64,000 nucleotides of DNA, from positions 500,464,001-500,528,000 of the forward strand of contig NC_091283.1 in NCBI RefSeq assembly GCF_032444005.1, written 5' to 3'. Below, piece after piece: positions 1,513-55,575 of this stretch. Source of the stretch: Ranitomeya imitator. Taxonomy: Eukaryota. The notes under the pieces are model-generated. The model searched no databases, was not told the DNA's origin, and saw nothing but the letters and a program-made list of their open reading frames with translations. A program made the position numbers and the translations under genes. Numbering within the stretch: position 1 is the stretch's first letter; the number at the start of each line of letters is the position of its first letter.

Positions 1513-1563
1513 TATTTCTTTGAAGAAATAACTCTTTTTTGTTTTTCTTTGATGTCTTACAAG

Positions 1564-29883: not shown

Positions 29884-32800
29884 CTAACATTTGGTGTGGT
29901 GGACATGCTCAGGAGTGTGGACGATCTTCACAGAATGGTGAGACACTGTGGAAGAAGGAAACAAGAAGACAGAAATTAACTCTTCATTATTATATATGTT
30001 AAGACACGTCTGTTGCACCTCTGCCACATAAGTAGACCCTATTTTTATATTTGGGGACACAGGAGCTTCATGTTACACCTCTGGCCCAGGGTTAAGCTGC
30101 ATCTTCATACCCTAAGCAACCAGTAAGATTTCAGTTCTCACTTTTTCTAGCCCTTTAAATGCATACAATCTTCCACCTGATTGGCTACTATGAGCAAATT
30201 CTTTATTCTTAACTGGCACATTGTTTTGTTAAATTTCCCAAAGGGCTGCTAGTCACTCTAAGTATTATTATTGGGTGGGAATAGAACTACAGAGAAATAG
30301 TTTGGGTGTCCCAGTATTTTTGCCAATATTTCTGAAAGAGTCCAACACAGTTTTCACAGTGAACACCATTAATTTTAGACCTTTGCCCGCATACTTAATG
30401 GCCAGTAACTACTGGTTTGTGTGCCTCAGACAAAGTCATGTCATTCTCTCTAGAAACATTACAATGCCACCTTGGAGAAGAGGTGGACGGGCCTTACAGT
30501 GGGAGGGGATGAAGAACGAATGATATCAGTTAACATTAGTATTTATGGGAAATATATAGTTACATTTAGGTTCGGGGGCAAAAGTTGCTTCAAATTAAAA
30601 AATGCCTTTAAGAGGAAAATATCCAATCTTTGTCCTCAGATGGCACCATATAATTCAGTTCTTTTTAAACTTACCGTCTTTGGTGCTTGAATGGTGGTGC
30701 CCAGTAACACTGGAAAGGGTAAAATAGAAATTAGTCAAAATCTTATACAAGAAGGACAGTCAATTCATTAGTTCTATAAGTCATATAAGATAATATCAGC
30801 CTTTAATGTTTAGAATTCAAATACATTTTTTGAATGGACAGACACATCAAATTATTCCTTCATATGAAGAGCTTCCAAAGTTAAACGGATCTGTCACTAG
30901 ATTTCACAAGACATTGTTAAGTAATATAAACCTCTTTGACCTGCCAAGGCTGGTGTACATATTTTGAGAATTCCTATTGGAATGGCTATTAAATTCTGAT
31001 ATTGGGATCATTATATTATGATTCTAGCTAGAGCTGGGCTAAAATTTTCATTTTAAAACAGGCAGAAAAATTTTCCAAAAGGATTATATGTTGCTAATCT
31101 GACATGGAATTTTAAAGAAAGTACACCAACCTTTCCAGGGCTTTGAGATGTAATTAATATAGTTTGCTTTGTGAATTCTAACAACATCTCCTATTTAATT
31201 ATGAAAAATTGTTATAAAAATAAAATTGCTACTACGTACTGGATATCATGACCCTCCAGAAGGCGCTTGTATGTGGCAATCTCCATTTCCAGATGTGTTT
31301 TCTGATCCATTAAGATCTTGTATTCATGGTTCTGACGCTCTAGGTCTGCACGGATCTGTGACAACTCGGACTCAACATTGTTGATCAGGCATTGTAACTG
31401 AGAAAGCTGGGAACCGAAAGTGGCCTCTGTCTCAGCCAATGTACCTTCCAAAGCTGATTTCTGTGGAATGAAATGAAGACATAAATGAGGTGCGGATTGT
31501 CTTCTGCAGAATCTTTTGGGTCTACGATTGTGTCAGACCTGGGCCTATCAATGATTTCCCCAGTACTCTGATAAACCATCCTACCTTCAAGTGCTCACAT
31601 ACATGGTTTATCGGATAGCACTCTTCCCAATGTTATACTATGGAGAAGTCCAGATCTGCGATTATTTTCTTATGCAGATTCAAATACTGTATATGGGTGA
31701 GTATGAAACATCGAATTGCATATACGCTCACAGAGACAATCGAGAAGATGGAGAAATTAAGTTCTCTGTCTTCTCTCCATCTGTGATACAATTCACTCAT
31801 GTGAGAGAATCAGATCACACTGAAATGACACTTGGATCAAACTCCGACATAGTGTCATTAGCATAATCAGCCCTATTCTCTTGCATGAGAGAATCTGCAG
31901 TAGTGTGAGCGAGCCCTAAATCTGGTATAACCAAATGTTTACTAATACCTTGTGGTGCTACACTTACCATGCTTTGTTGGCTTTGTAGTTCAATCTCAAG
32001 GGTCTGGACATTGCGTCTTAATTCAATGACCTCAGTTTGGACAGATTGCAGTTGTTCAGAACCGGATGCCATCTGACGATTCAGTTCTTCACTCTAGTAC
32101 ATGGGATGCATAAAATTCTAAATGAAGACTCATATAAATATTTATTTATATAATGTATGGTCTGATATCTTTATGGCATAGTAATGTGTTGTACAATGCT
32201 TAGCGTTCAAGAAACATTTGCAATGTGTGTTTTGCAGACCAGTCAATTTAAATAATTTTGGTAAATATTTATTCTGCATAATGGCACTGCCAATAAAGGA
32301 ATGTGCTATGATCTTACAGAGAGATGTTTTGAATTATCAGCAAACCAAGTGGTTAGGCACAGTATTACAAGAAAACCTGCAAAGGTTTTATTGTGAACAA
32401 TTTCATTTTCCTGATATCTCAAAGCAACTGACACGTGCTGTATTCATATTGCTATGTTTAGCCATGTTTCTTCAGTATGAATGAAATATCTTTAGCCCTG
32501 CAGTAAAATAAAAGTACATACCCTTTGAAGGAACATGCTCTCAACTTCCCTCATGTTTCTTTCCATCATGTTTTCATATTGCTCACGGATCTCAGATAAT
32601 ACTCTGTTCATATCCATTGATGGAGCAGCATCCACCTCCACATTGACTCTAGCACCCAACTGTGCACGCAGAGAGTTTACTTCCTACAAAAACAAACAAA
32701 ACAGATATTGATACGCAAAACAGTAAGACCCCTTGTGTTTATTGCCAGATGAATTTTATTTACTATAGAAGGTATCATTATATGACAAACATCACCTCCT

Positions 32801-34053
32801 CATGGTTCCTCTTCATATGTTGCAGCTCCTCTTGTAGGCTCTGAACTTGACCCTCCAAGTCACATACTTCCCGGGTCAGCTCATCTAGCACACGACGCAA
32901 TCCATTAACATCAGACTCAACATTGTTTCTAAGTCTTAGTTCCATCTCATACCTACATAAAAGGACAATACAACCACCAGAATTAAGATTAGGACAGCTT
33001 TAACGGTTACCAGTAACTGTGTCTACATATTTTGACTAACATATTTAACAATTCTGATTTAGACTACTGTGTTAGTAACATACTTATTCTTGAAATCATC
33101 TGCAGCCAGCCTGGCATTGTCGATTTGAAGGACAATTCTGGCATTTTCAATAGTCGCAGAAGATATCTAAACAAAATAAAAAAAATGATAGTAGATTAGA
33201 AGGGGTCTTCCATAGGTTTCTCACTCCTAATGTCATAGATCTATAAATGAGTACAGTCAGTCAATTGTTGACAATTATATATTCTCCCAATATTCAATGC
33301 CTCCTTAAGCAAGTTCCAGGTCTGAATATATATAGATGGTACATACTGTACAAAGCTTCACAGTGGTGTATTTCATGCACATTTAGAATATATTATTTAG
33401 AATTTAAATATATCGTATATTATAATAATTGTCATTACAATGCATGTGTGTTTATTTATAAATGCCAAATATTATATAATCCTCACCTGTCCTTGAAGAT
33501 CCTGAATGGTCCTAAAGTAGCAGCTAAAATCAGGAATAGAGCTGGGTTGGTTCTTTTCATACCATTCTCTTATATTCCTCTCCAGCTGGGCATTTTCTTG
33601 TTCTAATGATCTAACTTTTTCAAGATATGAAGCAAGTCGATCATTTAGATGTTGCATGGTTTCTTTCTCATTGACATTGAAGAGACCATCACTCTTCCAG
33701 CCACTGTGGCCTCCAAAGCTGCCAAAGTGAATGCTGTGACCATGCGCACTTCCAAATCCACATCCATGACCTATAGAACTATGCTTGGAAATAGAGATTC
33801 CTTTCCCTCCAGATCCTCCATGGACACTTGGGGTCCTGTAGTGACCTCCATGATGGGAAAGACTTGAGCTCCCATGATGTAACTTATGGAATCCTCCATG
33901 AAGAGACCCATGAGATGGTCCATGATGGGAAATTTTATGTGAATCCCCATGATGAAGCTTATGGTGGAGAGTTGAGATATGACTGGTGATCTTATGGCTG
34001 GTTCCCTTGATGGACCCAGCTGTAGAATGACCTGACTTAATACAGTGGCTCAT
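29884..34053 (-). CDS. His-rich type I keratin B, complete, 8 exons, 470 aa
   Basis: Exons 34053-33487, 33166-33084 (83), 32952-32796 (157), 32683-32522 (162), 32093-31968 (126), 31460-31240 (221), 30709-30675 (35), 29945-29884; all GT-AG; [37 protein letters not shown]; ends HHTKC*. Confidence 0.95.
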
Positions 34054-34118
34054 GTTGAGAGACTTGCAAGAATCAGCTTACAAAACAGCTTCTTTGAAAA
34101 CCCAAGTGAAGGAGCTCA

Positions 34119-34125
34119 TTTTATA
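34119..34125 (-). promoter_or_regulatory. TATA box of keratin B
   Basis: TATAAAA ~70 bp upstream of ATG. Confidence 0.7.
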
Positions 34126-36315
34126 AAAAGCACAGGGGGTGTTGCAGAACGTTAAATGCTTTACAAGCATCATAGTTTGTTTCATTTGCCGGTTGATGTG
34201 ATTTATATAGAAGTCATTTCTATGATTGCTTAAGAAAGATCATAGGGAAGGTGGAATCTGTGACAAGTTTATTATAGAGCTGTTCAACAGCGTTATATTC
34301 ACCACACCTATAGAGCTAGAACAAAAGGTTTGAAAGTCAGCATTATGGACACATGAAAGACTGCTTGTGGCTATTAATATATATTGAAAATATGATTTCT
34401 TGGTAACTGAAAATTGATAAAATTACTTTGGACAAAAAGTCACATAAAGTCATTTCAAATATATAGATAATTCCTTTTTTTCACTTTAGACTACATTTAG
34501 ATAGACCAACTGGCCATTAAATGACCGTCGATCGGGTATATGCAAGCCGATCCGCAATCATTTAATGGCATGTTTAGAAAGTCTGATCACACTCTGATTT
34601 GCACAGAACGATCATTAGTAGATTGTTCTGTGAGCACAGAACATCATGTTCTTGGCAGCACATTTCCTGTTTCATAGGAAGGTGTGCAGCCAAGAACGAT
34701 GATTTTTAAGCTTGCTTAGACAATCTGATAGTCGGGAAATGAGCGGTCCTAGTATTACCTCTTCCCGATTATCAGCCGGATTAAATGGGACAATATTTCC
34801 CAGTGAAAAGTCAAATAGAGAGTTTTCAATTTGCCTGTGTAATGCAATTTAATTCAAATAACATAGATTTTTGTTATTAAAGGGAATCTGTCAACACAGA
34901 ATGACTGTTCAAATCAAGCACAGGCGATCGGTGCTTCATGGCGGGGTCATTCATTTATATACACCATCCCACCTACTTGGTTTCCGTCTATCTCCACCCT
35001 TCTCTGGCTCTATGAAGCCAGAGCTGACAATCAAATAAGAAGGGTGGAGATTGAGAGAAAAAAAGCAGGTGGGAAGGTGCATATAAATGATTAGTCCCAC
35101 AATGAAGCACCGAGTTTCGGGAACAGTCAGTGCTGAAAGAGTTCCGCCAGGACAAAATGGAGGTACTGAGTCAACAGATTGAATGTTCTAAATCAGGGCA
35201 TGAGGAATATACAATTTCCACAATCCCTCATTGTAAAGGATTAATTTCTTCTTGACAATGCTAAGGGAACTGCAAAGGTAGACCTTGATTTTACTAAGGA
35301 ATGGGATTAAACACCTTGCTTTTTATGAATTTAAGGGGGTCAAAATCTTCATGTGTAAGTCTAGAAGATCCCTTAAGAATCATCAATATGGGGAACAGAA
35401 GATTTTCGTAGAGAATTAACACTTTGATGTATTCTACTTTTTTCTAATCTCATGTAACATATTTAATTGTACCCTGTTATGATATGTTATGTTTTGAGAA
35501 ATTATAGAAATAAAGTACAAATAGACAATACAACAATATGCAATAGGCAGAAGAAACCTTTTATTTATGAAGTATTAAAAGGGCAAATGGCAGCAATATA
35601 CAATATTACATAACACAAATACTAGGTAAGTATAACACAAGCAATGGTTAGACTTTAGGGCATGGAGCCAAACAATAGGCCATAGTTCCCATTATTGATG
35701 ATGCACTAGGATGCTTTTCCAGTATTGGGTACTATTATTATCACGTTGAATATTTAAGTGAAGGAGCTAATGTATTTTTTTTTTCTTTTCGAAACAGCAA
35801 TACTCTTGTTTATGGTTATGTATAGTAGAATAGTTCAATCCCATTCATTTGAACTGGGATGAGCTGCAATACCAAAAACTACCTTTAAATAAGAGTGGCA
35901 CAGTTTTTCAACCCTAAACAACTTCTTTAAGAATGCTAATGAATATAATTTAATGGTATACAGTAGGGTGACTGTTGTCAGTCTTGTGCAATAAATTCAT
36001 TGTAAATTTTTCCATTTGTACCATATTCCAAATACTAAAAGCCTATTATCTAAATAAGTAAGAAGATATAATGAAGGATATTGTTAGATGAGAGGATGGC
36101 AAAATTATTTTTTTGACAATTTTGATATTAGCCCCAAGACCCTAAACACGTAAAACTCACTGGACAGTCATACTAACATAAATAGTTGTAGATATGCATT
36201 ATACATGGACATCAAAAGCTCATAGAATAAAGCCCATCCCATCTTCAGTCTACACTGGACCAGATTTTCAACTGGTGTTCACATTGTTCTGTGATGCATC
36301 CTCACGATTGGATGA

Positions 36316-39300
36316 CTACTTGGACTGGTGACCATGATCCTTGCTTTGGTGACTTTTTGCATGGTCAGATTCATTAGAACTGACATGTTTTTTTGAGAGG
36401 CTGAGTGATACTGCAATGAGAATGAATAAGGTTTAGTCAAAGTTAAGTCATGATGACCATCAGTGGTGTAGCTATAGGGATTGAAAGGATAACAGTTGCA
36501 GGTAGAAGAAGGAGGGCAAAGCTTATCTACCTCATAAAAAATACCAGTATGATTAATGACAAATGTTAAGTAAGGACACTTATCGATTTTACATTGGGGT
36601 CCTGAGGTTTCAAGTTACTCTGTTGATGGACATAACATGTTCAGTGGTACACACGAGTGTTATGTTTTTCAGGACGATTTCTTGTACATTTTTTAGTAGT
36701 TCCATTCAAGTATAATGTTTGGTGGCTAGTATGTAAAAAAGGGTGAAGCTTAAAAAAGCTATCTTATACAATATAACATAACAGTGTTATTGGGGGCCAT
36801 ATTAAGCGAATCAATATGACAATGAGAAAGAAGATATTGTGTAAACTATAGTTAATATAGGGAATCTATGGGAATGATGAATATTAGTCTAGACTCTGTT
36901 AAATATTATAGTGTACTGATCTAAAAGGAGACCTTAAATATCACTATAACTTTTCATGACAATTATTAATTTTTCAATGACAGAACTTATTGATTATTAT
37001 TCTGTAATGTTTTTTCCTATCTTTAGGAGTTATCACCCATCTTGCGAAAGGTGATGATAACCCAACTTCTAAAGATGGAAATAACTAAAAAAATATTAAA
37101 TTGTTCATTCTTTGAATAAGTAGAATGCTTAAATTGACATGTTCATTTTTATATTACGTCATTGTGATACTTACGCTCTTTGCTGATCTTATCATGATGG
37201 CGATGTTCAGGCATACTGCAACAAATAATAGTTCATATTTGAAATGTGCAATGTAAAAAATCATCAAGATCATTGTAAAAAAAAATTAACTGTTCATCAG
37301 TATTTAGCTAACCAGTGTGTTTTAAAGTACTTTCAATTTTTTCTACATGTGAGATGTATCAAATAATGATCTGTTGAAGGAAATTACTTAAAAGTGTCTA
37401 CAACCTTATTGCTACAACCTTTGGTACACCTTTGCAAGTTAATTCTTTGATAGTTTCATATTTGAAGCAGTATGATATGATAAGTCATTATTAAAATTTC
37501 ACATACTGGATGTCCTGTTCTTCAAGCAGTCTTTTGTATGTGGTGATCTCCATCTCTAGATAGGTGGTTTGGTCCATAAGAATTTTGTACTCATGGATCT
37601 GACGCTCTAGTTCTGAGCGAATCTTCAAGAGCTGGTCTTCTAGATTGTCAATCAGGGTTTGTAGATGGGAAAGCTGGGAACTAAATGTTGCTTCAGTCTC
37701 TGCCAATGTACACTCAAGTGCTGATTTCTGCAAACAGATGAATATATTTCAATTAAAATGTCCATTCTTGTTTTAACTAAGCGGGATTCTTTGATGAGTC
37801 CATCAGAATTTACGCGCAATAAAAGTCCAATATTTATAAAATATAAGAGGATTAATAATTTGTAACATCAAAATCCTACTAGAAGTGTAGTCCTCTAAAA
37901 GAAGTGATCTTTAGAGAGGTTTAATGATATAAAGTGTACCCACCATGGAATTCCTAGGACACACCCAAACAGTAATACTGGGTAGATATATCTGAACCCA
38001 CAAATCAACCATAATAAGAAAATCAACTAGTGGTATCACAGACATGTATTTTAGTAGAGTAAAAAGATATACATCTATTATCAATAAATATACCTTAGAT
38101 TTACAAATTAATTTATGTATTTTCTTGAAGAATTATTTGTACCATGCTCAGTTGACTTTGCAGTTCAATCTCCAGGGTTTGCAAGCATCGCTTCAAGTCA
38201 ATAACTTCAGTTTGGACTGACTGCAGTTGTTCGGACCCAGAAGCCACCTGACGATTTAATTCCTCACTCTTAAAAAGAATTGATATACAGTCACAAATGA
38301 ACAGTATGAGAGTAAAGTATTTCTACAAAATTAAGTAAAATTGGTTATTTTACCCTGGCAAGGAACATGCTCTCAACCTCCTTGAGGTTCCTATCCATCA
38401 AGTTTTCATATTGTTCTCGAATTTCAGACAAGACTCTGTTAAGGTCAACAGATGGAGCAGCATCCACTTGCACATTGATCCTGGCACCCAGTTGGTTGCG
38501 TAGAGCAGTAATGTCCTTTCAAGACACAAGATAAAGAAATCTTATTTCTTAAAAGCCTTGGAACATGGACAAAAAGTCACATTTAGGCTACTTTCTCACT
38601 TCCGTCTTTATAAAGACGTTGCATTGCGTCATTCTGTGCAAAAAACGCATCCTGCAAAGTTGCTCGCAGGATGCGTTTTTTGCACATAGACTTGTATTAC
38701 CGATGCATCGCGTCTGAAAACAGCATCCGCTGCCCACGTTGTGCTCTATTTTGCAAAACGTCTGTCGGTACGTCGGGCCGACGGATTGTGACGGCCCTGT
38801 ACCGATGGAAGTGTGAAAGTAGCCTTACTCAGCGGCTTTTATTTACATTAGGTTAGCATATACTAGGGGTGGGTGACATTTGAGAAATCCACTTATGTCT
38901 TCTAGCAGTTAGTATGTGAAGTTTTTGCTTCCCATGATTTGACAAACAAGCAAAGATGTCGTAAACCAGCCTACAGTTTTCACAGAAAATTCTACAACTG
39001 CTTCCTCGGGTTAATTTCCAAGTTCCAGGCATTGCTGTTGTCATATAGCCATGGTCATCACAGGCTTCAACATGGTGTAGAAAAGGAACTGAGGGCATCA
39101 CAAGAATCTAATTTTCCATTTTAAGGGTAAACACCTGTTAAATGTGCCACTGCGGCTATATTCAGTAATCTGTTAAACATACCTCTTCTTGGTGCTTCTT
39201 CATCTGAAGCAATTCATCCTGCAAACTTTGCAGTTGCATCTCCAGATCTGCTCTCTCTATATTTAGGCCTTCAAGAACTTTGCGCAATCCATTCAAGTCA

Positions 39301-40247
39301 GTCTCAACAAAGTTTCTCAGTCTAACCTCCATCTCATATCTTGGGGAAAACACAGATAGCAATTGAAAATTAATGTCTAAAAATGTTTTACTATCTCATT
39401 TTGATAACTATCTAGTTCCACTTACTTGTTCTTGAAATCATCAGCAGCTAGTCTAGCATTATCAATCTGAAGGACAATCTTGGCATTTTCAACAGATGCA
39501 GCCGAGATCTGTTATGAAGAAAGCTTGATCAAAGTTTCATGTAGTATATTTTATATCAACTACATGGTATACTACAGACAGCAAATCTTTAATTTCCCAT
39601 TCCCCGTAGCATATAAGAGATGCATATCTAGTTAATTTACATCAACTAAAATTTTGAGAACTAATTCTATGGTATATTCATCTTTAGTAGACTTAAAACT
39701 CCCCAAAGAAATAGTTTCAAATGCTGATATCACTTACTTTATTTTGAAATTCTTCGATGGTTTTATGGTAATGCTGAGAATCAGGTAGCGATGCATGAGC
39801 ATTTTTATCATACCACTCACAGATTTTCTTCTCAAGTTGAGTATTTTCTGTTTCCAGAGAACGGACCTTCTCAAGATAGGTAGCAAGACGGTCATTCAAA
39901 AGTTGCATTGTTTCCTTCTCATTGACATTAAAAAATCCCTCATTCTTCCAACCACCATGACTTCCCGTGTTGTTAAAGTGACTGTCAAGATTATGGCTAC
40001 TGTGTCCACCTCCATAGCTGCTTCCATGACTGAAGGAAGAGTGCTTGGAAAAGACAATTGGTTTAATCGGTCCACTATGAGCACTATGAGATACATGGTG
40101 AACTTTATGGTATCCTCCGTAATGGGCACCACCATGATGAATTGAGGACATATGGCTGGGAATCTTAGGAGAGTGGCTGCTAAGATGAACACTTGATTTG
40201 AAGTGTCCAGAAAGAGAATGGGTTTGCTTGTGCTGGCTGTGGCTCAT
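36316..40247 (-). CDS. His-rich type I keratin C, complete, 8 exons, ~464 aa
   Basis: Exons 40247-39738, 39508-39426 (83), 39339-39183 (157), 38515-38354 (162), 38268-38143 (126), 37727-37507 (221), 37215-37175 (41), 36410-36316; [30 protein letters not shown]; last exon less certain. Confidence 0.92.
38586..38824. mobile_element. PIF/Harbinger-like MITE in intron 3 of keratin C
   Basis: TTA|ggctactttctcact ... agtgtgaaagtagcc|TTA. Confidence 0.8.
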
Positions 40248-40329
40248 GTTGATGAAGTTGTATTGTTGATTTGTCGTCAGTGTATCTTCCTTGGAAAGAA
40301 GTTGATGTTTTGCTGTGTACAGGGCTCAC

Positions 40330-40336
40330 TTTTATA
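40330..40336 (-). promoter_or_regulatory. TATA box of keratin C
   Basis: TATAAAAG ~85 bp upstream of ATG. Confidence 0.7.
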
Positions 40337-41810: not shown

Positions 41811-41851
41811 TAGCTGTCATCATTTACAGTGATTCTGATTAATTCCATATA

Positions 41852-43240
41852 CAGTACAGACCAAAAGTTTGGACACACCTTCTCATTTAAAGATTTTTTT
41901 GTATTTTCATGACTATGAAAATTGTACTTTCACACTGAAGGCATCAAAACTATGAATTAACGCAGGTGGAATTATATACTTAACAAAAAAGTGTGAAACC
42001 ACTGAAAATATGTCTTATATTCTAGGTTCTTAAAAGTAGCCACCTTTTGCTTTGATGACTGCTTTGCACACTCTTGGCATTCTCTTGATGAGCTTCAAGA
42101 GGTAGTCACCGGGAATGGTTTTCACTTCACAGGTGTGCCCTGTCAGGTTTAATAAGTGGGATTTCTTGCCTTATAAATTGGGTTGGGACCAACAGTTGTG
42201 TTGTGCAGAAGTCTGGTGGATACACAGGTGATAGTCCTAGTGAAGAGACTGTTAGAATTTGTATTATGGCCAGAAAAAAGCAGCTAAGTAAAGAAAAATG
42301 AGTGGCCATCATTACTTTAAAAAATGAAGGTCAGTCAGTCCAAAAAATTGGGAAAACTTTGAAAGTGTCCCCAAGTGCAGTGGCAAAAACCATCAAGTGC
42401 TACAAAGAAATTGGCTCACATTAGGATCGCCCCAGGAAAGGAAGACCAAGAGTCACCTCTGCTTCTGAGGATAAGTTTATCCGAGTCACCAGCCTCAGAA
42501 ATCGCAGGGTAGCAGCAGATCAGATTAGAGATCAGGTCAATGCCACACAGAGATCTAGCAGCAGACACATCTCTACAACAACTGTTAAGAGGAGACTTTG
42601 TGCAGCAGGCCTTCATGGTAAAATAGCTGCTAGGAAACCACTGCTAAGGACAGGCAACAAGCAGAAGAGACTTGTTTGGGCTAAAGAACGCAAGGAATGG
42701 ACAATAGACCAGCGGAGATCTGTGCTTTAGTCTGATGAGTCCAAATTTGAGATCTTTGGTTCCAACCATAGTGTCTTTGTGCGACGCAGAAAAGGTGAAC
42801 GGATGGACTCTACATGCCTGGTTCACACCGTGAAACATGAAGGAGGAGGTGTAATGGTGTGGGGGTGCATTGCTGGTGACACTGTTGGGGATTTATTCAA
42901 AATTGAAGGCATACTGAACCAGCATGGCTACCACAGCATCTTGCAGCGGCATGCTATTCCATCCAGTTTGCGCTTAGTTGGACCATCATTTATTTTTCAA
43001 CAGGACAATGACCCCAAACACACCTCTAGGCTGTGTAAGGGCTATTTGACCAAGACGGAGAGTGATGGGCTGCTACGCCAGATGACCTGGCCTCCAGAGT
43101 CACCAGACCTGAACCCAATCAAGATGGTTTGGGGTGAGCTGGACCACAGAGTGAAGGCAAAAAGGCCAACAAGTGCTAAGCATCTCTGGGAACTCTTTCA
43201 AGATTGTTGGAAGACCATTCCCGGTGACTTCTTCTTGAAG
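41852..43240 (+). mobile_element. Tc1-like DD38E (Intruder-type) transposon pseudogene, 3'-truncated
   Basis: TA|cagtacagaccaaaagtttggacac; transposase from ATG 42266 with several stops; QQDNDPKH + 38-residue spacing to NPIK (E>K); breaks at IPGDFFLK. Confidence 0.8.
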
Positions 43241-46200
43241 CAGTCTGGGCCTCACAGAGCGACGCTCCCGGGAGATCGCGGTGTGCGTTCACACTGAACA
43301 CACACCGCGATCTCCACCGCAGAAGCAGGGACCGCCAGGAGGGTGAGTATCGACCTATATTCACCTGTCCCCGTTCCATCGCTGAGCGGCGCCATCTTCC
43401 CGGTCTTCGGTCTGTGGCCTTCAGTTCAGAGGGCGCGATGACGCGCTTAATGCGCGCCGGCGCCGCCCTCTGACTGAACAGTCACGGCCAGGAGACCGGG
43501 AAGATGGCGGCGCTCAGCGATGGAACGCCGGACAGGTGAGTATAGTAAGTGCTGGGGGGGCCTGAGCTGGCGGCGATACCGGCACCTGACCCCCACAGCG
43601 CGCCGGTGTCCCCGCCTGCTCAGGCCCCCCAGCACTCGGCGCCGAGCGGGTCAGAGGCAGTATGGGGACGCAGGATGGAGCAGCACATAAGGATGGGGAC
43701 GCAGGATGGAGCAGCACATAAGGATGGGGACGCAGGATGCAGCAGTACATAAGGATGGGGACGCAGGATGGAGCAGCACATAAGGATGGGGACGCAGGAT
43801 GGAGCAGCACATAAGGATGGGGACGCAGGATGGAGCAGCACATAAGGATGGGGACGCAGGATGGAGCAGCACATAAGGATGGGGACGCAGGATGGAGCAG
43901 CACATGACAGGATGGGGACGCAGGATGGAGCAGCACATAAGGTTTGGGACGCAGGATGGAGCAGCACATAAGGATGGGGACGCAGGATGGAGCAGCACAT
44001 AAGGATGGGGACGCAGGATGGAGCAGCACATGACAGGATGGGGACGCAGGATGGGAGCAGCACATAAGGATGGGGACGCAGGATGGAGCAGCACATAAGG
44101 ATGGGGAAGCAGGATGGAGCAGCACATAAGGATGGGGACGCAGGATGGAGCAGCGCATGACAGGATGGGGATGCAGGATGGAGCAGCACATGGCAGGATG
44201 GGGACGCAGGATGGAGCTGCACATAAGGATGGGGACGCAGGATGGAGCAGCACATAAGGATGGGGACGCAGGATGGGAGCAGCACATAAGGATGGGGACG
44301 CAGGATGGAGCAGCACATAAGGATGGGGAAGCAGGATGGAGCAGCACATAAGGATGGGGACGCAGGATGGAGCAGCGCATGACAGGATGGGGATGCAGGA
44401 TGGAGCAGCACATGGCAGGATGGGGACGCAGGATGGAGCTGCACATAAGGATGGGGACGCAGGATGGAGCAGCACATAAGGATGGGGACGCAGGATGGAG
44501 CAGCACATAAGGATGGGGACGCAGGATGGAGCAGCACATAAGGATGGGGACGCAGGATGGAGCAGCACATGACAGGATGGGGACGCAGGATGGAGCAGCA
44601 CATAAGGTTTGGGACGCAGGATGGAGCAGCACATAAGGATGGGGACGCAGGATGGAGCAGCACATAAGGATGGGGACGCAGGATGGAGCAGCACATGACA
44701 GGATGGGGACGCAGGATGGGAGCAGCACATAAGGATGGGGACGCAGGATGGAGCAGCACATAAGGATGGGGAAGCAGGATGGAGCAGCACATAAGGATGG
44801 GGACGCAGGATGGAGCAGCGCATGACAGGATGGGGATGCAGGATGGAGCAGCACATGGCAGGATGGGGACGCAGGATGGAGCTGCACATAAGGATGGGGA
44901 CGCAGGATGGAGCAGCACATAAGGATAGGGACGCAGGATGGAGCAGCACATAACAGGATGGGGACGCAGGATGGAGCAGCACATAAGGATGGGGACGCAG
45001 GATGGAGCAGCACATAAGGATGGGGACGCAGGATGCAGCATGAACATAACGATGGGGACGCAGGATGCAGCATGAACATAAGGATGGGGACGCAGGATGG
45101 GAGCAGCACATAAGGATGGGGACGCAGGATGGAGCAGCACATAAGGATGGGGACGCAGGATGGAGCAGCACATAAGGATGGGGACGCAGGATGCAGCATG
45201 AACATAAGGATGGGGACGCAGGATGCAGCATGAACATAAGGATGGGGACTCAGGATGCAGCATGAACATAAGGATGGGGACGCAGGATGCAGCAGCACAT
45301 AAGGATGGGGACGCAGGATGCAGCATGAACATAAGGATGGGGACGCAGGATGGGAGCAGCACATAAGGATGGGGACGCAGGATGCAGCAGCACATAAGGA
45401 TGGGGACGCAGGATGCAGCATGAACATAAGGATGGGGACGCAGGATGGGAGCAGCACATAAGGATGGGGACGCAGGATGCAGCAGCACATAAGGATGGGG
45501 ACGCAGGATGGAGCAGCACATAAGGATGGGGACGCAGGATGGAGCAGCACATAAGGATGGGGACGCAGGATGCAGCATGAACATAAGGATGGGGACGCAG
45601 GATGCAGCAGCACATAAGGATGGGGACGCAGGATGCAGCAGTACATAAGGATGGGGACGCAGGATGCAGCAGCACATAAGGATGGGGACGCAGGATGGAG
45701 CAGCACATAAGGATGGGGACGCAGGATGCAGCAGCACATAAGGATGGGGACGCAGGATGCAGCAGCACATAAGGATGGGGACGCAGGATGCAGCATGAAC
45801 ATAAGGATGGGGACGCAGGATGCAGCAGCACATAAGGATGGGGACGCAGGATGCAGCAGTACATAAGGATGGGGACGCAGGATGGAGCAGCACATAAGAA
45901 TGGGGACGCAGGATGCAGCAGCACATAAGGATGGGGACGCAGGATGCAGCAGCACATAAGGATGGGGACGCAGGATGCAGCAGCACATAAGGATGGGGAC
46001 GCAGGATGCAGCAGCACATAAGGATGGGGACGCAGAATGGAGCAGCACATAAGGATGGGGACGCAGGATGGTAGCAGCACATAAGGATGGGGACGCAGGA
46101 TGGAGCAGCACATAAGGATGGGGACGCAGGATGCAGCAGCACATAAGGATGGGGACGCAGGATGCAGCAGCACATAAGGATGGGGACGCAGGATGCAGCA

Positions 46201-46660
46201 GCACATAAGGATGGGGACGCAGGATGGAGCAGCGCATGACAGGATGGGGACGCATGATGGAGCAGCGCATGACAGGATGGGGACGCAGGATGGAGCAGCA
46301 CATGACAGGATGGGGACGCAGGATGGGAGCAGCGCATCACAGGATGGGAGCAGCGCATCACAGGATGGGGACGCAGGATGGGAGCAGCGCATGACAGGAT
46401 GGGGACGCAGGATGGGAGCAGCGCATGACAGGAAAGGGAACGCAGGATGGAGCAGCACATGACAGGATGGGGACGCAGGATGGAGCAGCGCATGACAGGA
46501 TGGGGACGCAGGATGGAGCAGCACATGACAGGATGGGGACGCAGGATGGAGCAGCGCATGACAGGATGGGGACGCAGGATGGAGCAGCACATACCATGAT
46601 GGAGACAATATACCAATATAAATGCTCGCCACCCGGGCGTAGAACGGGTTCAATAGCTAG
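43241..46660 (+). mobile_element. Non-autonomous Helitron-like element carrying a large minisatellite (5' boundary uncertain)
   Basis: 3' hairpin acccg..cgggt, 7 nt spacer, CTAG|T at 46657-46661; CpG-rich inverted repeat 43356-43545. Confidence 0.55.
43662..46593. repeat. ~2.9-kb G-rich minisatellite, ~32-35 bp unit GGATGGGGACGCAGGATGGAGCAGCACATAA
   Basis: About 90 direct tandem units with variant blocks. Confidence 0.97.
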
Positions 46661-46727
46661 TTAATAAATAATAGTAAGAAAGAACAAAAAATGGCTGCAC
46701 TCACCAGCTCTTGACAATTCTTGTTAT

Positions 46728-47501
46728 TTAAGGTACAGTTACACAGGATCCATGAACATGCTTATGAGGGGAGGGATGAAAGACATCAGACGACAACTTC
46801 TCCTCTGTACTCTTGTTAGCACGCTGTTTGCGCTTACGTGCGGCATCGGCGGCTTTTCGCTCTGCATCATTACCATACTTTATATCAGACCTGATCTTAC
46901 GTGCGCCATCAGCAGCTTTGGACTCTGTGTCATTAGTATACTTAACAGTATCCAGGCGCTTGCATCTATCCTCTGTACTCTTGTTAACACGCTGTTTGCG
47001 CTTACGTGCGGCATCGACGGCTTTTCGCTCTGCATCATTACCATACTTTATATCAGACCTGATCTTACGTGCGCCATCAGCAGCTTTGGGCTCTGTGTCA
47101 TTAGTATACTTAACAGTATCCAGGCACTTGCATCTATCCTCTGTACTCTTGTTAACACGCTGTTTGCGCTTACGTGCGGCATCGGCGGCTTTTCGCTCTG
47201 CATCATTACCATACTTTATATCAGACCTGATCTTACGTGCGCCATCATAAGCTTTGGACTCTGTGTCATTAGTATACTTAACAGTGTCCATGCGCTTGCA
47301 TCTATCCTCTGTACTCTTGTTAGCACGCTGTTTGCGCTTACGTGCGGCATCGGCGTCTTTTTGCTCTGCATTATTAGTATACTTTCTATCAGACCTAATC
47401 TTACGCGCGCCATCAGCAGCTTTGGGCTCTGTGTCATTAGTATCCTTACTATTAGAGCTCATGTTGGCTAAGCTAAACAGCTTTAAGCGTGGTGGTGGCA
47501 A
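46728..47501 (-). CDS. Basic 58-aa tandem-repeat ORF (STPR-like), probable Helitron RepHel N-terminus, truncated
   Basis: 174-bp unit x ~3.6; AARKRKQRANKSTEDRCKRLD motif; downstream of a Helitron-type 5' end at 48276/48730. Confidence 0.5.
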   Translation of the reverse strand: MPPPRLKLFSLANMSSNSKDTNDTEPKAADGARKIRSDRKYTNNAEQKDADAARKRKQRANKSTEDRCKRMDTVKYTNDTESKAYDGARKIRSDIKYGNDAERKAADAARKRKQRVNKSTEDRCKCLDTVKYTNDTEPKAADGARKIRSDIKYGNDAERKAVDAARKRKQRVNKSTEDRCKRLDTVKYTNDTESKAADGARKIRSDIKYGNDAERKAADAARKRKQRANKSTEEKLSSDVFHPSPHKHVHGSCVTVP

Positions 47502-50810: not shown

Positions 50811-51096
50811 TATCTCTACAAATCCTGAAAGTTTAATATTCTTGCTCAGTTACCCATTATCAGAACTGAAGCCATAGACTTCCAGTGCTACTGGTAGGGT
50901 GTGGAATGTTTGGTCCTTTCATTTACCAGTCAACTATGGATTAATTGTAAGAAGTTTTATAACTGTCTGATGCTTTTCATACCGCTCGCAAAATTAATGT
51001 TAAGCGCATTACCAAAGCATATAAAACACATGATTACCCAGACAGTTGTGTATTCATTTAATAAAAATTGGTTTACGTGACACTCCCCTTCTTCCC

Positions 51097-51104
51097 TATA
51101 TAAG
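51097..51104 (+). promoter_or_regulatory. TATA box of keratin D
   Basis: TATATAAG ~100 bp upstream of ATG. Confidence 0.7.
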
Positions 51105-51197
51105 CGATCAAGAAAAGCCCAGAACATACCTTGAAGAGCCTACAGTAAGACTGATATTTAATTCTCTATCTTCTGTAATTCCACATATTTTGTAACC

Positions 51198-54100
51198 ATG
51201 AGCCACAGTGCATACTCATCTGCTGGATCACATCATGGAAAGTGTCATGTTGACAGTCATTCTCCTAGGATCTCAACCCACGTCTATGGTGTCAATCATG
51301 GAAAAACCCACAAGATTCATCATGGAGGATCTCATATTTCCCTTCATGGAGGTTCCCATACTTCACACCAAGTTGGATCCAATGTTTCCCACCATGGATA
51401 TTCTCACAAAGTTCACTATGGTGGAGGGTCCCATCTCTCACATTGTGGAAGTTCACACAAAGGCCATCATGGAAACCTGTGCAGAGCTCCAAGTGTTCAT
51501 GGAGGATCAGGAGGCAAAGGAATCTCTATCTCCACGCATTCTTCTCATGGAATCAGTCATAGTGGCCACCATAGTCATGGGAAATCCCACAGTTATGGCC
51601 TATTTAGTGTTAATGAGAAAGAAACCATGCAACATCTGAATGATCGTCTGGCATCTTATTTAGATAAAGTTCGTTCTTTAGAGCAACAAAATGCACAACT
51701 GGAAGGAAATATTCGTGACTGGTATGAGAGGAATCAACCCAGCACCTTACCTGACTTCAGCTGCTATTTCAGGACTATTCAAGAGTTACAGAGCCAGGTA
51801 AAATAATAAATGTGTACATTAAGGTCAACTGTGAGTAATTCAGTAAATGTGTTTTTCAATTGTTTATATTATCACAATCTTCTATAGATTTCATCAACAA
51901 GTATAGAAAATGCCCGCCTTGTACTACAAATAGATAATGCTCGTCTGGCAGCAGATGATTTCAGAAACAAGTAAGTAATGAACATTAGATTATTTAAGAA
52001 GTTGATCAATGAAAATAAAATAAATTGCGATTTAATTATGTTCTCAGGTTTGAAATGGAGCGTCAGTTAAGCAACTCAGCTGAGGCTGATGTGAATGGCT
52101 TGAGAATGCTTCTAGAAGAACTCAATCGGGAGACATGCAGCCTAGAAAGTCAGGTCCAAAACCTCCAAGAAGAACTGCAGCAGATGAAGAGAAACCATGA
52201 TGAGGTAAAATACATGTAAATAGTATTTAATTGTCCAAACTAATTAGTATGTGTAGTGACTTCTAAAATGTCATCATGGGAAATATTTACTGATGCTACC
52301 TACAGTAGCAGAACTACATAAGAAAACTACTTTGTTTAATTATCAGTTTCAACATAATATATTTAAATAATTAATCCTTGTACCCTGGTATACATCAAAT
52401 GAGAGTTATTGATGTAAATTGACCCAATATATTTATCAACACAGGACTTCTTGATACATGTGTCAAAAACCATAGAGAAATCAACCTGGGTGTGTTGAAT
52501 CTGAACCAAAAACACACACAGGACAAACTATTCTGGCTGCAGATGTGATTTATTTGTCTTTTTTCCAATATTTCTGTAGAGCACTAACAAGTTAATTTGT
52601 AGAAGCATATACCAAACCATAGATTGTCTATTCATAGGAAGTAAACTCTCTGCGAGCCCAGCTAGGTGCCAGAATCAATGTAGAAGTTGATGCAGCTCCA
52701 TCTGTAGATCTGAACAGGACCTTGGCTGAGATAAGGCAGCAATACGAGAATTTAATGGATCGCAATCTAAGAGAAGTAGAGGCCATGTTCCGGCAAAGGG
52801 TAAGTTTTTACAAGAATATTGTTTTATACACATAGAAGGATATATAGTATGGATTGTATTAAACAAAACCAGTTACCTCTAGATACATCTTTAAGCGCCA
52901 TTTTAGTCAGCTATACTGTATGATGACTGCATATCGGAAGTGTTACTATTACATTTACAACATCAAAGCTCCACATTATTCTACTGAACCAAAAGATCAT
53001 TAAAAAGAATTATGGAAGTCCTTCATCTGAATAGTTTTGTTCACCCATAATCTCCATTTAAAGTAAAGTGAGCAAGACCATTTTTCTAATGCAAAGTTAT
53101 CCTATTTTACACATGTAGACAGAAGATCTTAACCGAGAGGTTGCATCTGGCTCTGAGCAACTGCAGTCTGTCCAAACTGAAGTCATTGACCTGAAACGAA
53201 AAATACAAACCTTGGAGATTGAACTACAAAGTCAGTTGAGCATGGTAAGTTGATCTCCAATTCAGCTGAATTTATGAATATATGAATACATGATGGAACA
53301 CTAGGTATGTGAGGTCCAGAAGTGTCAGCAGATGTTCTTGGGCTACAATGCAAAATCTCTAACAGGATGGCCCAGCTACTTTGTTCCATTTATTGTATGT
53401 GTGTTCTAATATGGATGACAACACATTCAAGAACTTAGCCAATAAACTGTGTTTGAACATGTTTTTTATCCATCTTTTTTACTAATAATTTCTTATCGTT
53501 AATCCAGAAATCTGCCCTGGAAGGCACTTTAGCAGAAACCGAAGCTACATTTGGATCCCAGCTTTCACAGCTACAAAGTCTCATCAATAAAGTGGAGGCT
53601 CAGCTGTCTCAGATCAGATCTGATCTAGAACGCCAAAACCATGAGTACAAAATCCTCATGGACCAAAAGACCCACCTGGAAATGGAGATCGCCACTTACA
53701 AACGTCTGCTGGAAGGTCATGATATTCAGTAGGTATCTCGTCAAGCATTTGATGTTCAACATTAGCTCAGCATTCTCTAGTTAAGTTGAGAATGGTGAAA
53801 CTAGAAAAATTTTCATATTCTAAAACAATAAAGTGTATTTTTAGAGTTACAGTAACATTATTGTCATTCTTTTACAGTGGATCAGATCATTATGCTTCAG
53901 CATTCAAACATGGTATGTAGCCTGTGTTTTCATAGTCCTACCGTTTAAAAGTACAATGCATCAAAAACAGAGAGTCACATAAGAAAGGTTAAAAAATGAC
54001 CCTACTTTAGAGTGCAGGATTTTGACACTCAACACAGAAAGTGCAGTTTGTTCCCTATACTCAGGGCTTTAGTGACCCTTGGGTGGAAGCATAACTTTAA

Positions 54101-55575
54101 ACTCCTGTGCGCAAGTCAAAACATATAATCTGGTTCTCACCTACCATGTGACATTCATAAGACTAATGTCTTGTTACGTGAAACCGAAGTATTATCTCCT
54201 ACCTCTCTGCACCACCTTTAGCTATGCCCCTACTGGTGGAAGTTGTTTGCTACAGGGAAGATTAAACCAACTAAGGCTGGGTTAACTTAAACCAATGGCC
54301 CTATAGCAGCGAGATGTCTGTTTTCCCGTGGCCTACTGTACTAATATGCTCCGTATAGAATCTACATCCCATGAAAGAATAGAGATGTAATGAAAACAAT
54401 AAGCAAGGAGTGCAAAACGTGTGAAACCTGGTGATTATGTGGATTATCAAACAGGGGCCAAGTGGCCACTAACCTGCACAACCCCAGTTTGCGCTTGAAG
54501 GGATGATACCTGAGAATCATTGGACACTGCCTTGAACCACGGCTGCTGGCCAGCACTTCCGGGTTCTGGTCACGTGATCAGGGAACAGGATACGCGTCAC
54601 TGCAGGTCCTTAAGCTGGGAAGCGCGAATCTAGCATTGCCCGGACACCGCAGGTCCTTAAGCTTCTCAATGGAATTTACTATGCTCTTAGCTGCTCCTGC
54701 CGCAAACCCTCAGGAAGAGGGATACAGAATGATGTAGGAGAAAAAGGTGCAGCTGTCTGTGGAGCGCTATGGCTAAAATCTGAATGCATGGGTGAATAAC
54801 TTTTCACCCATGCATTCAGATTTTAGCCATAGCGCTCCACATGCCACTACAACTTTTTCTCCTTCATCATGAAAGAATAGAGGACACTTTGAGTGTTCCT
54901 GCCTTTAGAAACTCACTTCAAACTACATACTTCATCCTACTATTTAAATACAATTAGGAAACTCTCAGGATTTACAGGTTCTCCGCTATATTTCCTTAAA
55001 GGGAATCTGTCAGCAGGTTTTTGCTATGTTATCTGAGGTACGGGTTAAAACACATATTTCAACGATGTGTCACATGTCAGGCTGTGTGCTGTTCTTTACT
55101 TACAATAAAGGTTTTATCACTTGATGATTATCATTGCTGGGACTACAGCACATAAAGCAGTAAATGCATGCTAGTCCAACTCCACCCCCTCCTGTGATAA
55201 GCAGCTCACTGTTAATAGACAATGTACACAGAGAGCCTGATGTGGGTGGGGGTAGCTTTCTCAGCTCTGCTGAATTGCTAAATCTAAAAACTCTGATTGT
55301 GTCACAACTGCTGCACCCAGTAAACTAAGTGATACATATTTGGCTTCAGGGTGCCTACATCATGCTGCTCTCAGATGAGGTAGCAAAAACCTTTAATGTT
55401 TGGTCCTCTTTTTCAATAGTTTGATTCTATATATCTTGAGTTTGTTATGTTCTCTGCTGTAATGTCCAGCATCATTAATGTAAACCAAAAGTCGTTAATT
55501 CTCTTCTTATTTTCAGAATCTCATCACTCAATGAAGACACATCATGTTGCAAGCCATGTACACAGTAAATGCTAA
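51198..55575 (+). CDS. His-rich type I keratin D, complete, 8 exons, 480 aa
   Basis: Exons 51198-51797, 51888-51970 (83), 52048-52204 (157), 52638-52799 (162), 53119-53244 (126), 53508-53728 (221), 53878-53912 (35), 55517-55575; [31 protein letters not shown]; ends HVHSKC*. Confidence 0.95.
54385..54867. mobile_element. Unclassified insertion ending in a long perfect hairpin (intron 7 of keratin D)
   Basis: 15-bp direct repeat catgaaagaatagag (54370-54384, 54868-54882); 39-bp perfect arms 54758-54796 / 54803-54841. Confidence 0.55.
55000..55395. mobile_element. TTAA-targeting MITE, right end truncated
   Basis: TTAA|agggaatctgtcagcagg; homologous to 5355-5805. Confidence 0.55.

What the first reader, a model, noticed from the sequence alone, without database searches (positions are those of the whole stretch)
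29884..55575. Cluster of three histidine-rich type I keratins: a candidate His-based hardening or metal-binding cytoskeletal system
Hand counts of head domains: B 26 His/128 aa, C 21/109, D 31/139 (19-22%), in HH, HG and SH motifs that replace the Gly/Ser/aromatic loops of typical epidermal keratin heads. Cys is scarce and the rods are conventional and mutually similar. His-rich proteins elsewhere harden tissue without disulfides (Zn-His in polychaete jaws, His-rich squid beak proteins) or supply urocanic acid and pH buffering (filaggrin). Inference: an amphibian keratin subfamily may build these functions directly into intermediate filaments, e.g. in tadpole jaw sheaths or teeth, nuptial pads, toe pads or stratum corneum.
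Basis: partly seen in the sequence, partly recalled or inferred. Interest (0 to 1): 0.85.

Follow-up and report, generated by a model that had tools for sequence, protein, structure and literature searches.

The report
Histidine-rich frog hard-keratin genes
Three neighbouring poison-frog genes encode relatives of hair keratins whose end domains are about one-fifth histidine instead of cysteine-rich, an unreported feature shared across frogs that may explain how tadpole beaks and similar horny parts harden without disulfide bridges.

Summary
The window holds three intact, eight-exon type I keratin genes. B and C match Ranitomeya imitator RefSeq proteins at 100%. D's head is missing from its RefSeq model. 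Heads carry 26/127, 21/108 and 31/138 His. Tails are 20-30% His and rods under 2%.

This is a family trait, not a local oddity.
- About 90 frog relatives, from Ascaphus to neobatrachians, have heads with 13-30% His. Other type I keratins have 0-4%.
- The heads are built from diverged octapeptide repeats, SHxSHHGG.
- All 26 head histidines of B are kept in 11 species.
- In a careful tree the frog clade is sister to amniote hair keratins (support 100/96). These are therefore the "krt34 paralogs / hair-keratin homologues" already reported from tadpole mouthparts and male spines.
- None of seven relevant papers searched mentions histidine.

Genes D and B are transcribed, and D is spliced as modelled, but the tissue is not known.

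A hardening role is plausible and indirectly supported. Metal binding, quinone tanning and pH switching remain untested. My verdict is a real and probably unreported variant of a known gene family.

The parts
29884..34053 (-). Gene B: type I hard-keratin paralogue, 470 aa, 8 exons (33487-34053, 33084-33166, 32796-32952, 32522-32683, 31968-32093, 31240-31460, 30675-30709, 29884-29945 including the stop).
   Evidence: The spliced model has GT-AG at all introns and is 100% identical to R. imitator XP_069611793.1 (P0269). Exon 1 is fully held in RNA-derived runs X9 and X10.
33673..34053 (-). Head domain of B: 127 aa, 26 His, 26 Gly, 26 Ser, 2 Cys. It carries diverged SHxSHHGG-type repeats followed by the conserved [17 protein letters not shown] motif.
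   Evidence: All 26 His columns are His in at least 80% of 11 neobatrachian orthologues.
36316..40247 (-). Gene C: type I hard-keratin paralogue, 464 aa, 8 exons (39738-40247, 39426-39508, 39183-39339, 38354-38515, 38143-38268, 37507-37727, 37175-37215, 36316-36410 including the stop).
   Evidence: 100% identical to R. imitator XP_069611794.1 (P0271). The head (39924-40247) has 21 His in 108 aa and no Cys. It pairs with a Pelobates paralogue in the tree.
51198..55575 (+). Gene D: type I hard-keratin paralogue, 480 aa, 8 exons (51198-51797, 51888-51970, 52048-52204, 52638-52799, 53119-53244, 53508-53728, 53878-53912, 55517-55575 including the stop).
   Evidence: Model. It is 98% identical to R. 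variabilis XP_077113827.1 (P0278). Spliced contigs in X9, X10 and X12 join exons 1-2, 2-3, 3-4, 4-5, 5-6 and 6-(7)-8 at these sites. The R. imitator RefSeq model (P0280, 307 aa) covers only the rod.
51198..51611 (+). Head domain of D: 138 aa, 31 His, with readable octapeptide repeats ([32 protein letters not shown] ...).
   Evidence: Tandem Repeats Finder sees no DNA-level tandem repeat here.
51097..51138 (+). Proximal promoter of D: TATATAA box at 51097-51103. The mRNA contigs begin at 51138. ATG 51198 is the first ATG of the transcript.
34119..34125 (-). TATAAAA box 72 nt upstream of the ATG of B. C has a similar box at 40330-40336.
   Evidence: This is sequence only; no transcript start was mapped for B or C.
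1553..3770 (+). Gene A (context, partial in the window): exons 3-6 of a fourth type I keratin of the same hard-keratin clade, from a basal subclade that is not His-rich. The open segments holding the exons are 1553-1726, 2201-2404, 2492-2644 and 3549-3770.
   Evidence: The exon peptides are identical to R. imitator P0321. Orthologues have heads with 5-9% His and conventional tails. The subclade is placed.

Best explanation
B, C and D are three tandem members of a frog-specific, histidine-rich subclade of the type I hard keratins. These are the amphibian counterparts of amniote hair and nail keratins, called krt34 paralogs or hair-keratin homologues in the literature.

Shown here:
- Each gene encodes a canonical intermediate-filament rod flanked by an unstructured head and tail.
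- The head is made of diverged SHxSHHGG octapeptide repeats plus a conserved [17 protein letters not shown] motif.
- The short tail is His-rich and usually ends in a single Cys.
- Composition, repeat spacing and individual His positions have been conserved since before the split of Ascaphus from other frogs.
- D and B are transcribed.

Inferred, in three steps:
1. The rods pair with type II hard keratins (krt59 paralogs) to build filaments in hard-cornifying cells. The main site would be tadpole jaw sheaths and labial teeth, possibly also tubercles, spines or pads. I put this at about 0.65.
2. The His-rich ends project from the filament and take the role that Cys-rich ends play in hair keratins, namely locking filaments to each other and to matrix proteins.
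3. The chemistry would be metal coordination (Zn or Cu), covalent histidine-quinone tanning in these dark structures, or charge switching on acidification. The head goes from about +7..+10 at pH 7.4 to +23..+35 at pH 5.5. Taken together I put a His-based cross-linking role at about 0.4, with no basis yet to choose among the three chemistries.
For: Gene models and identity to RefSeq proteins.

Composition:
- His counts.
- 94 related frog proteins (86 distinct heads) have heads of at least 15% His, and the full spread in the clade is 13-30%. Fish, mammal, bird and other amphibian type I keratins have 0-4%.
- Tails of His-rich members average 23% His against 2% in others. A C-terminal Cys is present in 58 of 75 against 1 of 29.

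Octarepeat:
- Over 86 distinct heads the His-His spacing ratio against shuffles is 0.16 at lag 2, 1.65 at lag 4, 1.86 at lag 8 and 1.54 at lag 16.
- There is no DNA tandem repeat in any exon 1.
- Ser is coded by both AGY and TCN codons. The pattern is therefore held at the protein level.

Conservation: all 26 head His of B stay His in at least 80% of 11 hyloid and ranoid species, and 13 are invariant. Head identity is 75-94%.

Phylogeny (IQ-TREE, 61 rods):
- Frog clade plus amniote hair keratins: support 100/96.
- His-rich clade of 28 rows, including Ascaphus: support 100/96.
- After frogs, the best hits of the basal member are mammalian Ha5/KRT35.

Structure: AlphaFold gives helices 128-168, 176-287 and 294-435. 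Head 1-126 and tail 437-470 have pLDDT of 31-38.

Transcription:
- Spliced contigs for D.
- B exon 1 at share 1.00 in the same runs.
- Full-length intronless transcripts of ranid B orthologues in two further runs.

Literature:
- Most of the krt34 paralogs (10 of 13) are upregulated in Bombina tadpole mouthparts, all are low in Cys, and the authors call for a reinforcement strategy distinct from cysteine.
- Hair-keratin homologues in Leptobrachium spines are co-expressed with hoxc13, transglutaminase and tyrosinase.
Against: - No tissue is known for the runs that hold the R. imitator transcripts. Other RNA runs of the species hold none.
- The Bombina and Leptobrachium expression data are for the clade, not for identified orthologues of B, C or D. 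I could not match accessions because no supplements are held.
- No metal, quinone or pH data exist for these proteins or for tadpole mouthparts in the papers I could search.
- Published work points to sulfur-rich AEDC matrix proteins as the hardening agent. That may be sufficient without any role for His.
- Hoxc13-type promoter sites are not enriched upstream of B, C or D.
- Whether Xenopus krt34, which serves in claws, is His-rich could not be checked.
Confidence: 0.55

Rival explanations
1. The His-rich ends work mainly as a pH-switched polycation, not as metal or quinone ligands. When cornifying cells acidify, the heads gain about 20-25 positive charges. They then condense filaments onto the acidic rods or onto acidic or Cys-rich AEDC matrix proteins, and the final hardness comes from AEDC disulfides and transglutaminase.
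For: The heads have almost no acidic residues, and their computed charge rises from +7..+10 at pH 7.4 to +23..+35 at pH 5.5. The rods are -19..-22. Cys-rich AEDC genes are co-expressed with the clade in mouthparts. Transglutaminase is co-expressed in spines.
Against: The charge argument alone does not explain the strict avoidance of HxH, the period-4/8 spacing, or the HHGG motif. There are no pH data for these tissues.
Confidence: 0.2
2. They are ordinary differentiation keratins of the general (adult) frog epidermis or stratum corneum. The His-rich heads would simply replace Gly/Ser loops, perhaps supplying free histidine, urocanic acid or buffering after breakdown, as filaggrin does in mammals.
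For: The tissue of the expressing samples is unknown. From my own memory, not checked here: older autoradiography reported histidine uptake into upper epidermal layers of amphibians, in proteins of keratin size.
Against: The genes sit in the hard-keratin clade. The one krt34 paralog examined in situ in Bombina was not detected in general integument. The individual His positions are conserved, which suits a structural role better than a role as a source of free amino acid. There is no S100 domain and no large processed repeat.
Confidence: 0.12
3. The histidine richness is a neutral by-product of slippage in a low-complexity coding repeat and has no function of its own. Only the rod matters.
For: Repeat number and head length vary widely between paralogues, from 76 to 266 aa, as expected for a slippage-prone region.
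Against: - There is no DNA-level tandem repeat.
- Synonymous codon families are mixed.
- 26 of 26 His columns are conserved across hyloids and ranoids.
- The same composition appears in the non-repetitive tail.
- The trait is retained in every paralogue lineage since Ascaphus.
Confidence: 0.05

Closest known systems
Amniote type I hair (hard) keratins, KRT31-KRT40 / Ha1-Ha8
   Same: They form the sister clade in the rod tree with support 100/96. They share the eight-exon type I gene layout and rod. They are structural proteins of hard-cornified appendages, and their specialised non-helical ends differ from those of soft keratins.
   Different: Hair-keratin heads are Cys-rich (6-19% Cys and 0-4% His in the examples here) and cross-link by disulfides with KAPs. 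The frog proteins have 0-3 Cys and 19-23% His in the head, built from SHxSHHGG repeats.
Amphibian krt34 and its paralogs (Xenopus claw krt34; Bombina and Leptobrachium expansions)
   Same: By phylogenetic position B, C and D belong to this group. Bombina and Leptobrachium proteins fall inside the His-rich clade. The published description fits: not Cys-rich, tandemly duplicated, tied to tadpole mouthparts and spines.
   Different: The papers I searched do not mention histidine at all. Many RefSeq models lack the head, so the feature is hidden. Xenopus is reported to have a single krt34. No Xenopus protein appeared among His-rich relatives, and its own head could not be examined.
Histidine-rich structural proteins of invertebrate hard tissues (Nereis jaw Nvjp-1, squid beak His-rich proteins, His-rich ends of mussel byssal preCols). 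From my own knowledge, not tested here.
   Same: They have Gly- and His-rich low-complexity sequence in load-bearing, non-mineralised, often dark tissues. PreCols also have a structural rod with His-rich termini that cross-link end to end.
   Different: There is no sequence relationship. Those proteins are secreted extracellular proteins, whereas these are intracellular filament proteins of cornifying cells. Metal or quinone chemistry is demonstrated there and untested here.
Prion protein octarepeat (PHGGGWGQ), a copper-binding repeat. From my own knowledge.
   Same: It is an eight-residue tandem repeat with His followed by Gly-Gly. HGG is the commonest tripeptide after His in these heads, with 350 cases.
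   Different: It has one His per repeat and a Trp, and it is unrelated in sequence and context. The resemblance is a lead for a Cu(II) or Zn(II) binding test, nothing more.
Filaggrin and other histidine-rich epidermal differentiation proteins
   Same: High His content in a protein of differentiating keratinocytes that interacts with keratin filaments.
   Different: Filaggrin is an S100 fused-type protein, is processed from large repeats, and is not a filament subunit. Here the His-rich sequence is part of the keratin itself and its His positions are conserved.

Membership tests
Type I (acidic) keratin intermediate-filament proteins | Intermediate-filament rod domain of about 310 residues with conserved start (LNDRLASYL) and end (EIATYRRLLEG-like) motifs | tested here: met
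   Pfam PF00038 matches exon 1 at E of 2e-17 to 4e-20. The rod motifs are present. The PDB matches are K14 and K10 rod fragments. AlphaFold gives helices for coils 1A, 1B and 2.
Type I (acidic) keratin intermediate-filament proteins | Type I gene layout: 8 exons with the conserved 83/157/162/126/221-nt internal exons | tested here: met
   Exon sizes are 83, 157, 162, 126 and 221 nt in all three genes, with GT-AG throughout. The junctions of D are confirmed by spliced contigs.
Type I hard (hair-type) keratins / amphibian krt34 clade | Rod-domain phylogeny places the protein with amniote hair keratins and not with epithelial type I keratins | tested here: met
   IQ-TREE LG+C20 on 61 rods: frog clade plus hair keratins at 100/96, and the frog clade alone at 100/99. 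FastTree on 117 rods gives the same grouping. Xenopus krt34 itself was not available as a sequence.
Type I hard (hair-type) keratins / amphibian krt34 clade | Cysteine-rich head and tail (the amniote hallmark) | tested here: not met
   There are 0-3 Cys in the heads and 0-1 in the tails. This agrees with published low Cys in amphibian members, so the feature defines the amniote branch only.
Type I hard (hair-type) keratins / amphibian krt34 clade | Hoxc13 binding sites TT(T/A)ATx(A/G)(A/G) near the TATA box | tested here: inconclusive
   B has one site that coincides with its TATA box plus one at -368. D has one at -140. C has none. The background is 0.93 sites per 400 bp.
Type I hard (hair-type) keratins / amphibian krt34 clade | Expression restricted to hard-cornifying epithelium | not testable with these tools
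   Transcripts exist, but sample tissues are coded or unknown. Clade-level evidence comes from Bombina and Leptobrachium papers only.
Metal-coordinating His-rich biomaterial proteins | Demonstrated Zn, Cu or Fe coordination, or His-quinone cross-links, contributing to hardness | not testable with these tools
   Only composition and spacing are available: 19-23% His, the HHGG motif and period-8 spacing. No elemental data on tadpole mouthparts were found.
Filaggrin-like S100 fused-type proteins | N-terminal S100 / EF-hand domain followed by large processed repeats | tested here: not met
   Pfam finds only the Filament domain. The heads have no PDB or Pfam relative.

The most novel reading that the evidence does not exclude
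Frogs hardened their horny structures by a different chemistry from amniotes. In the hair-keratin lineage the frog branch replaced cysteine-rich ends with histidine octarepeats that cross-link filaments through metal ions or quinone tanning. The subclade expanded with the origin of the keratinised tadpole mouth. It was lost or reduced in lineages that lost that mouth, namely pipids, most microhylids and direct developers.
Probability: 0.3. Interest if true: 0.85.

Novelty: new variant of a known kind. Interest (0 to 1): 0.62.

Why it matters
A 2026 preprint states an open problem: amphibian hard keratins are not cysteine-rich, so how do tadpole jaw sheaths, labial teeth, claws and nuptial spines become hard? 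This finding offers a concrete, testable candidate built into the keratins themselves. It is a conserved histidine octarepeat head and a His-rich tail, in a clade orthologous to hair keratins.

If confirmed, it would be a vertebrate intracellular example of the histidine-based hardening so far known from worm jaws, squid beaks and mussel threads. It would also be a case of two alternative cross-linking chemistries evolving in one gene lineage.

There is a practical point as well. Many RefSeq models of these genes start at an internal Met and omit the head. Composition surveys based on them miss the feature.

Tried and rejected
- Hoxc13 motif scan of the three promoters: no enrichment over background.
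- ESM Atlas search with the head: only weak keratin-head clusters below the level of meaning.
- PDB search with the head alone: nothing.
- Supplementary tables of the Bufo larval-mouth RNA-seq paper: not held. The Bombina preprint is too recent to have supplements held, so I could not match Bombina or Bufo accessions to their differential-expression lists.
I used Nanorana instead.
- Ten kb on each side of the single Eleutherodactylus coqui clade member: no further keratin or His-rich frame. This span is too short to show loss.
- Looking for the tissue behind the ranid transcript runs SRR20701371 and SRR20701372, and for papers naming "cytoskeletal 19-like" with tadpoles: nothing.
- Literature on metals in tadpole mouthparts: nothing relevant.
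- The scan's own notes hold nothing on this place.
- I considered a Xenopus origin of the window early on. I rejected it when B and C matched Ranitomeya imitator proteins at 100%.
- Type II partner keratins could not be examined, because none lies in the window and no reference was available as a query.


Full report
**What is in the window**

The region holds three type I keratin genes. B and C lie in tandem on the minus strand (29884-34053 and 36316-40247). D lies on the plus strand (51198-55575). Each first exon is an open frame whose last 60 or so residues match the start of Pfam Filament. Downstream exons were found by their rod motifs and checked for splice sites. The two short tail exons were placed by comparison with dendrobatid orthologues.

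The final models have eight exons, GT-AG at every intron, and the type I hallmark internal exon sizes of 83, 157, 162, 126 and 221 nt. They give proteins of 470, 464 and 480 aa.
- B is 100% identical to Ranitomeya imitator XP_069611793.1.
- C is 100% identical to XP_069611794.1.
- D is 98% identical to an R. variabilis protein. In R. imitator RefSeq it is represented only by a 307-aa rod-only model.

The rest of the window is transposon sequence plus part of a fourth keratin, gene A.

**Check of the observation**

The heads are otherwise Ser- and Gly-rich, with 0-3 Cys. The tails are also His-rich, at 20-30%. The 312-residue rods have 1.6-1.9% His and are 71-82% identical to one another. AlphaFold on an alignment of 33 relatives gives the three canonical helices with high confidence and no structure for residues 1-126 and 437-470.

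**It is a family trait**

A full HMMER search with exon 1 of D, and a word-indexed search with the head of the Phyllobates orthologue of B, found relatives with the same kind of head. They come from:
- Ascaphus, Bombina and Discoglossus;
- Spea, Pelobates, Pelodytes and Leptobrachium;
- many neobatrachians.

All are named automatically, mostly "keratin, type I cytoskeletal 19-like" and sometimes "cuticular Ha4/5/6-like". Across all proteins fetched, heads fall into two classes. Frog relatives have 13-30% His, with head lengths of 76-266 aa. Fish, mammal, bird and other amphibian type I keratins have 0-4%. Tails of the His-rich class average 23% His and end in Cys in 58 of 75 cases. The figures for the others are 2% and 1 of 29.

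**Anatomy of the head**

The heads are built from octapeptide repeats with consensus SHxSHHGG. These are very clear in Mantella and Ascaphus members and more diverged in B, C and D. The repeats are followed by a nearly invariant [17 protein letters not shown] motif.

Over 86 distinct heads, His-His spacing compared with shuffles is:
- strongly depleted at lag 2 (ratio 0.16);
- enriched at lag 4 (1.65), lag 8 (1.86) and lag 16 (1.54).

Tandem Repeats Finder sees no DNA repeat in any of the three first exons. Ser is coded by both AGY and TCN codons. The pattern is therefore maintained at the protein level and is not the trace of a recent microsatellite.

Among eleven hyloid and ranoid orthologues of B, all 26 head histidines are His in at least 80% of species and 13 are invariant. 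Head identity is 75-94%. That argues for purifying selection on the histidines themselves.

**Which keratins are these**

I ran a careful IQ-TREE analysis of 61 rod domains. A FastTree run on 117 rods gave the same picture.
- A frog clade (support 100/99) is sister to amniote hair keratins (100/100), and the union has support 100/96.
- Inside the frog clade there is a small group with conventional ends (Eleutherodactylus "Ha4-like", Ascaphus "42-like").
- There is also a basal group with 5-9% His and conventional tails, to which gene A of this window belongs.
- The His-rich clade has 28 rows (100/96) and includes Ascaphus, so it predates the deepest split among living frogs.

This matches the published [quoted passage not shown], with 13 paralogs in Bombina and 30 in Leptobrachium but one in Xenopus and axolotl. 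It also matches the "duplicated hair keratin genes" of Leptobrachium.

**What is known about that clade**

- In Bombina, 10 of 13 krt34 paralogs rise during oral-disc formation. One paralog is expressed in jaw-sheath, keratodont and tubercle cells but not in general integument.
- All are low in cysteine. The authors conclude that hardening must use a strategy distinct from Cys-rich keratins and point to Cys-rich AEDC proteins.
- In Leptobrachium the hair-keratin homologues are male- and spine-specific. They are co-expressed with hoxc13, transglutaminase and tyrosinase.
- Xenopus krt34 serves in claws.
- "Histidine" occurs zero times in these papers, in the AEDC paper, in the nuptial-pad paper and in the treefrog toe-pad paper. 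The only review that holds the word uses it for bird and reptile proteins.

One reason the feature may have been missed is annotation. Many RefSeq models start at the Met inside NEKETMQ and lack the head. In Nanorana parkeri such a 312-aa model is preceded, in the same open frame, by an unannotated 126-aa head with 28 His. A bullfrog model translates the head in the wrong frame.

**Transcription**

- Contigs of two small runs of the window's species (X9 and X10, possibly one data set filed twice) and of a close relative (X12) cover D from 51138. That point is 60 nt upstream of the first ATG and about 35 nt downstream of a TATATAA box.
- These contigs join the exons exactly as modelled, including a 34-35 nt insert that corresponds to exon 7.
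- The same runs hold all sampled words of B exon 1.
- Full-length intronless transcripts of ranid B orthologues exist in two further runs.
- Other RNA runs of the species hold none.
- The tissues are coded or unknown, so expression is shown but its site is not.

**How it most likely works**

Shown: a conventional filament rod with two unstructured, His-rich, almost acid-free ends whose histidines are conserved.

Inferred: filaments with type II hard-keratin partners form in hard-cornifying cells. The His-rich ends then play the role that Cys-rich ends play in hair.

Three chemistries are compatible with the sequence.
- Metal coordination. HHGG and HGG motifs and regular spacing recall metal-binding repeats.
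- Covalent addition of histidine to quinones. These structures are dark, and tyrosinase is co-expressed in Leptobrachium spines.
- Charge switching. The computed head charge rises from +7..+10 at pH 7.4 to +23..+35 at pH 5.5, against rods of about -20.

The comparisons with worm-jaw, squid-beak, mussel-thread and prion repeats rest on my own knowledge, not on tests here. No elemental or cross-link data for tadpole mouthparts were found.

**Distribution**

No pipid, microhylid or Eleutherodactylus protein appeared among the His-rich relatives in any of the three searches. Gastrophryne and E. coqui proteins of other keratin groups did appear. This fits the published idea that hard-keratin copies were lost along with larval horny mouthparts. 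However, my lists are capped at 120 rows, and the E. coqui flanks are short. It is a lead, not a result.

**Verdict**

The gene family and its link to hard cornification are already known. The histidine octarepeat ends appear to be unreported, and they bear directly on an open question. The metal or pH mechanism remains a hypothesis.

Noticed in passing
window 1553-3770 (+): Gene A is a fourth type I keratin of the hard-keratin clade, from a basal subclade that is not His-rich (it matches R. imitator P0321). Only exons 3-6 are recognisable in the window. The RefSeq protein has an odd segment where exon 2 should be, and transposon-like frames lie at 700-1170, so the gene may be damaged or mis-modelled.
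   Followed up: partly
window 43662-46593: A large minisatellite: about 93 copies of a 31-bp unit (higher-order period 222), 93% matches, GC 0.58 with very strong G and A skew. It creates long spurious ORFs on the minus strand, between genes C and D.
   Followed up: no
window 46801-47448: A 168-bp tandem repeat, 3.9 copies at 95% identity, that carries an open frame of a Lys/Arg/Asp-rich repeated peptide. No meaningful Pfam match.
   Followed up: partly
window 20900-21937 (-): An uninterrupted 345-aa Tc1/mariner transposase frame (HTH_Tnp_Tc3_2 plus DDE_3). Degraded copies lie at 11238-11582 and 42779-43297.
   Followed up: partly
window 18259-20298 (+): A 679-aa open frame with a GIY-YIG endonuclease domain at its C-terminal end. 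This looks like a Penelope-type retroelement protein.
   Followed up: partly
window 60744-63611 (+): Ty3/gypsy-type retrotransposon frames: gag and aspartyl protease, then reverse transcriptase and RNase H. The element runs towards the window end.
   Followed up: partly
L001 9584-10000 (Nanorana parkeri KN906090.1): The RefSeq model "keratin, type I cuticular Ha6-like" (312 aa) starts at an internal Met. The same frame continues upstream into an unannotated 126-aa head with 28 His. Many frog RefSeq models of this family (Bombina, Mixophyes, Bufo gargarizans, R. imitator gene D) look truncated in the same way.
   Followed up: partly
P0008 (Aquarana catesbeiana AB205_0172120): The first 130 or so residues of this bullfrog model are the His-rich head read in a shifted frame (MEDPTLL... 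repeats). The same shifted frame appears as an ORF at window 51208-51639.
   Followed up: no
window 54950-55410: Inside the last intron of D there is a stretch with very high depth and many rearranged joints in all four runs laid (hundreds to thousands against about 11 for the exons). It is probably a highly repeated, transcribed transposon fragment.
   Followed up: no
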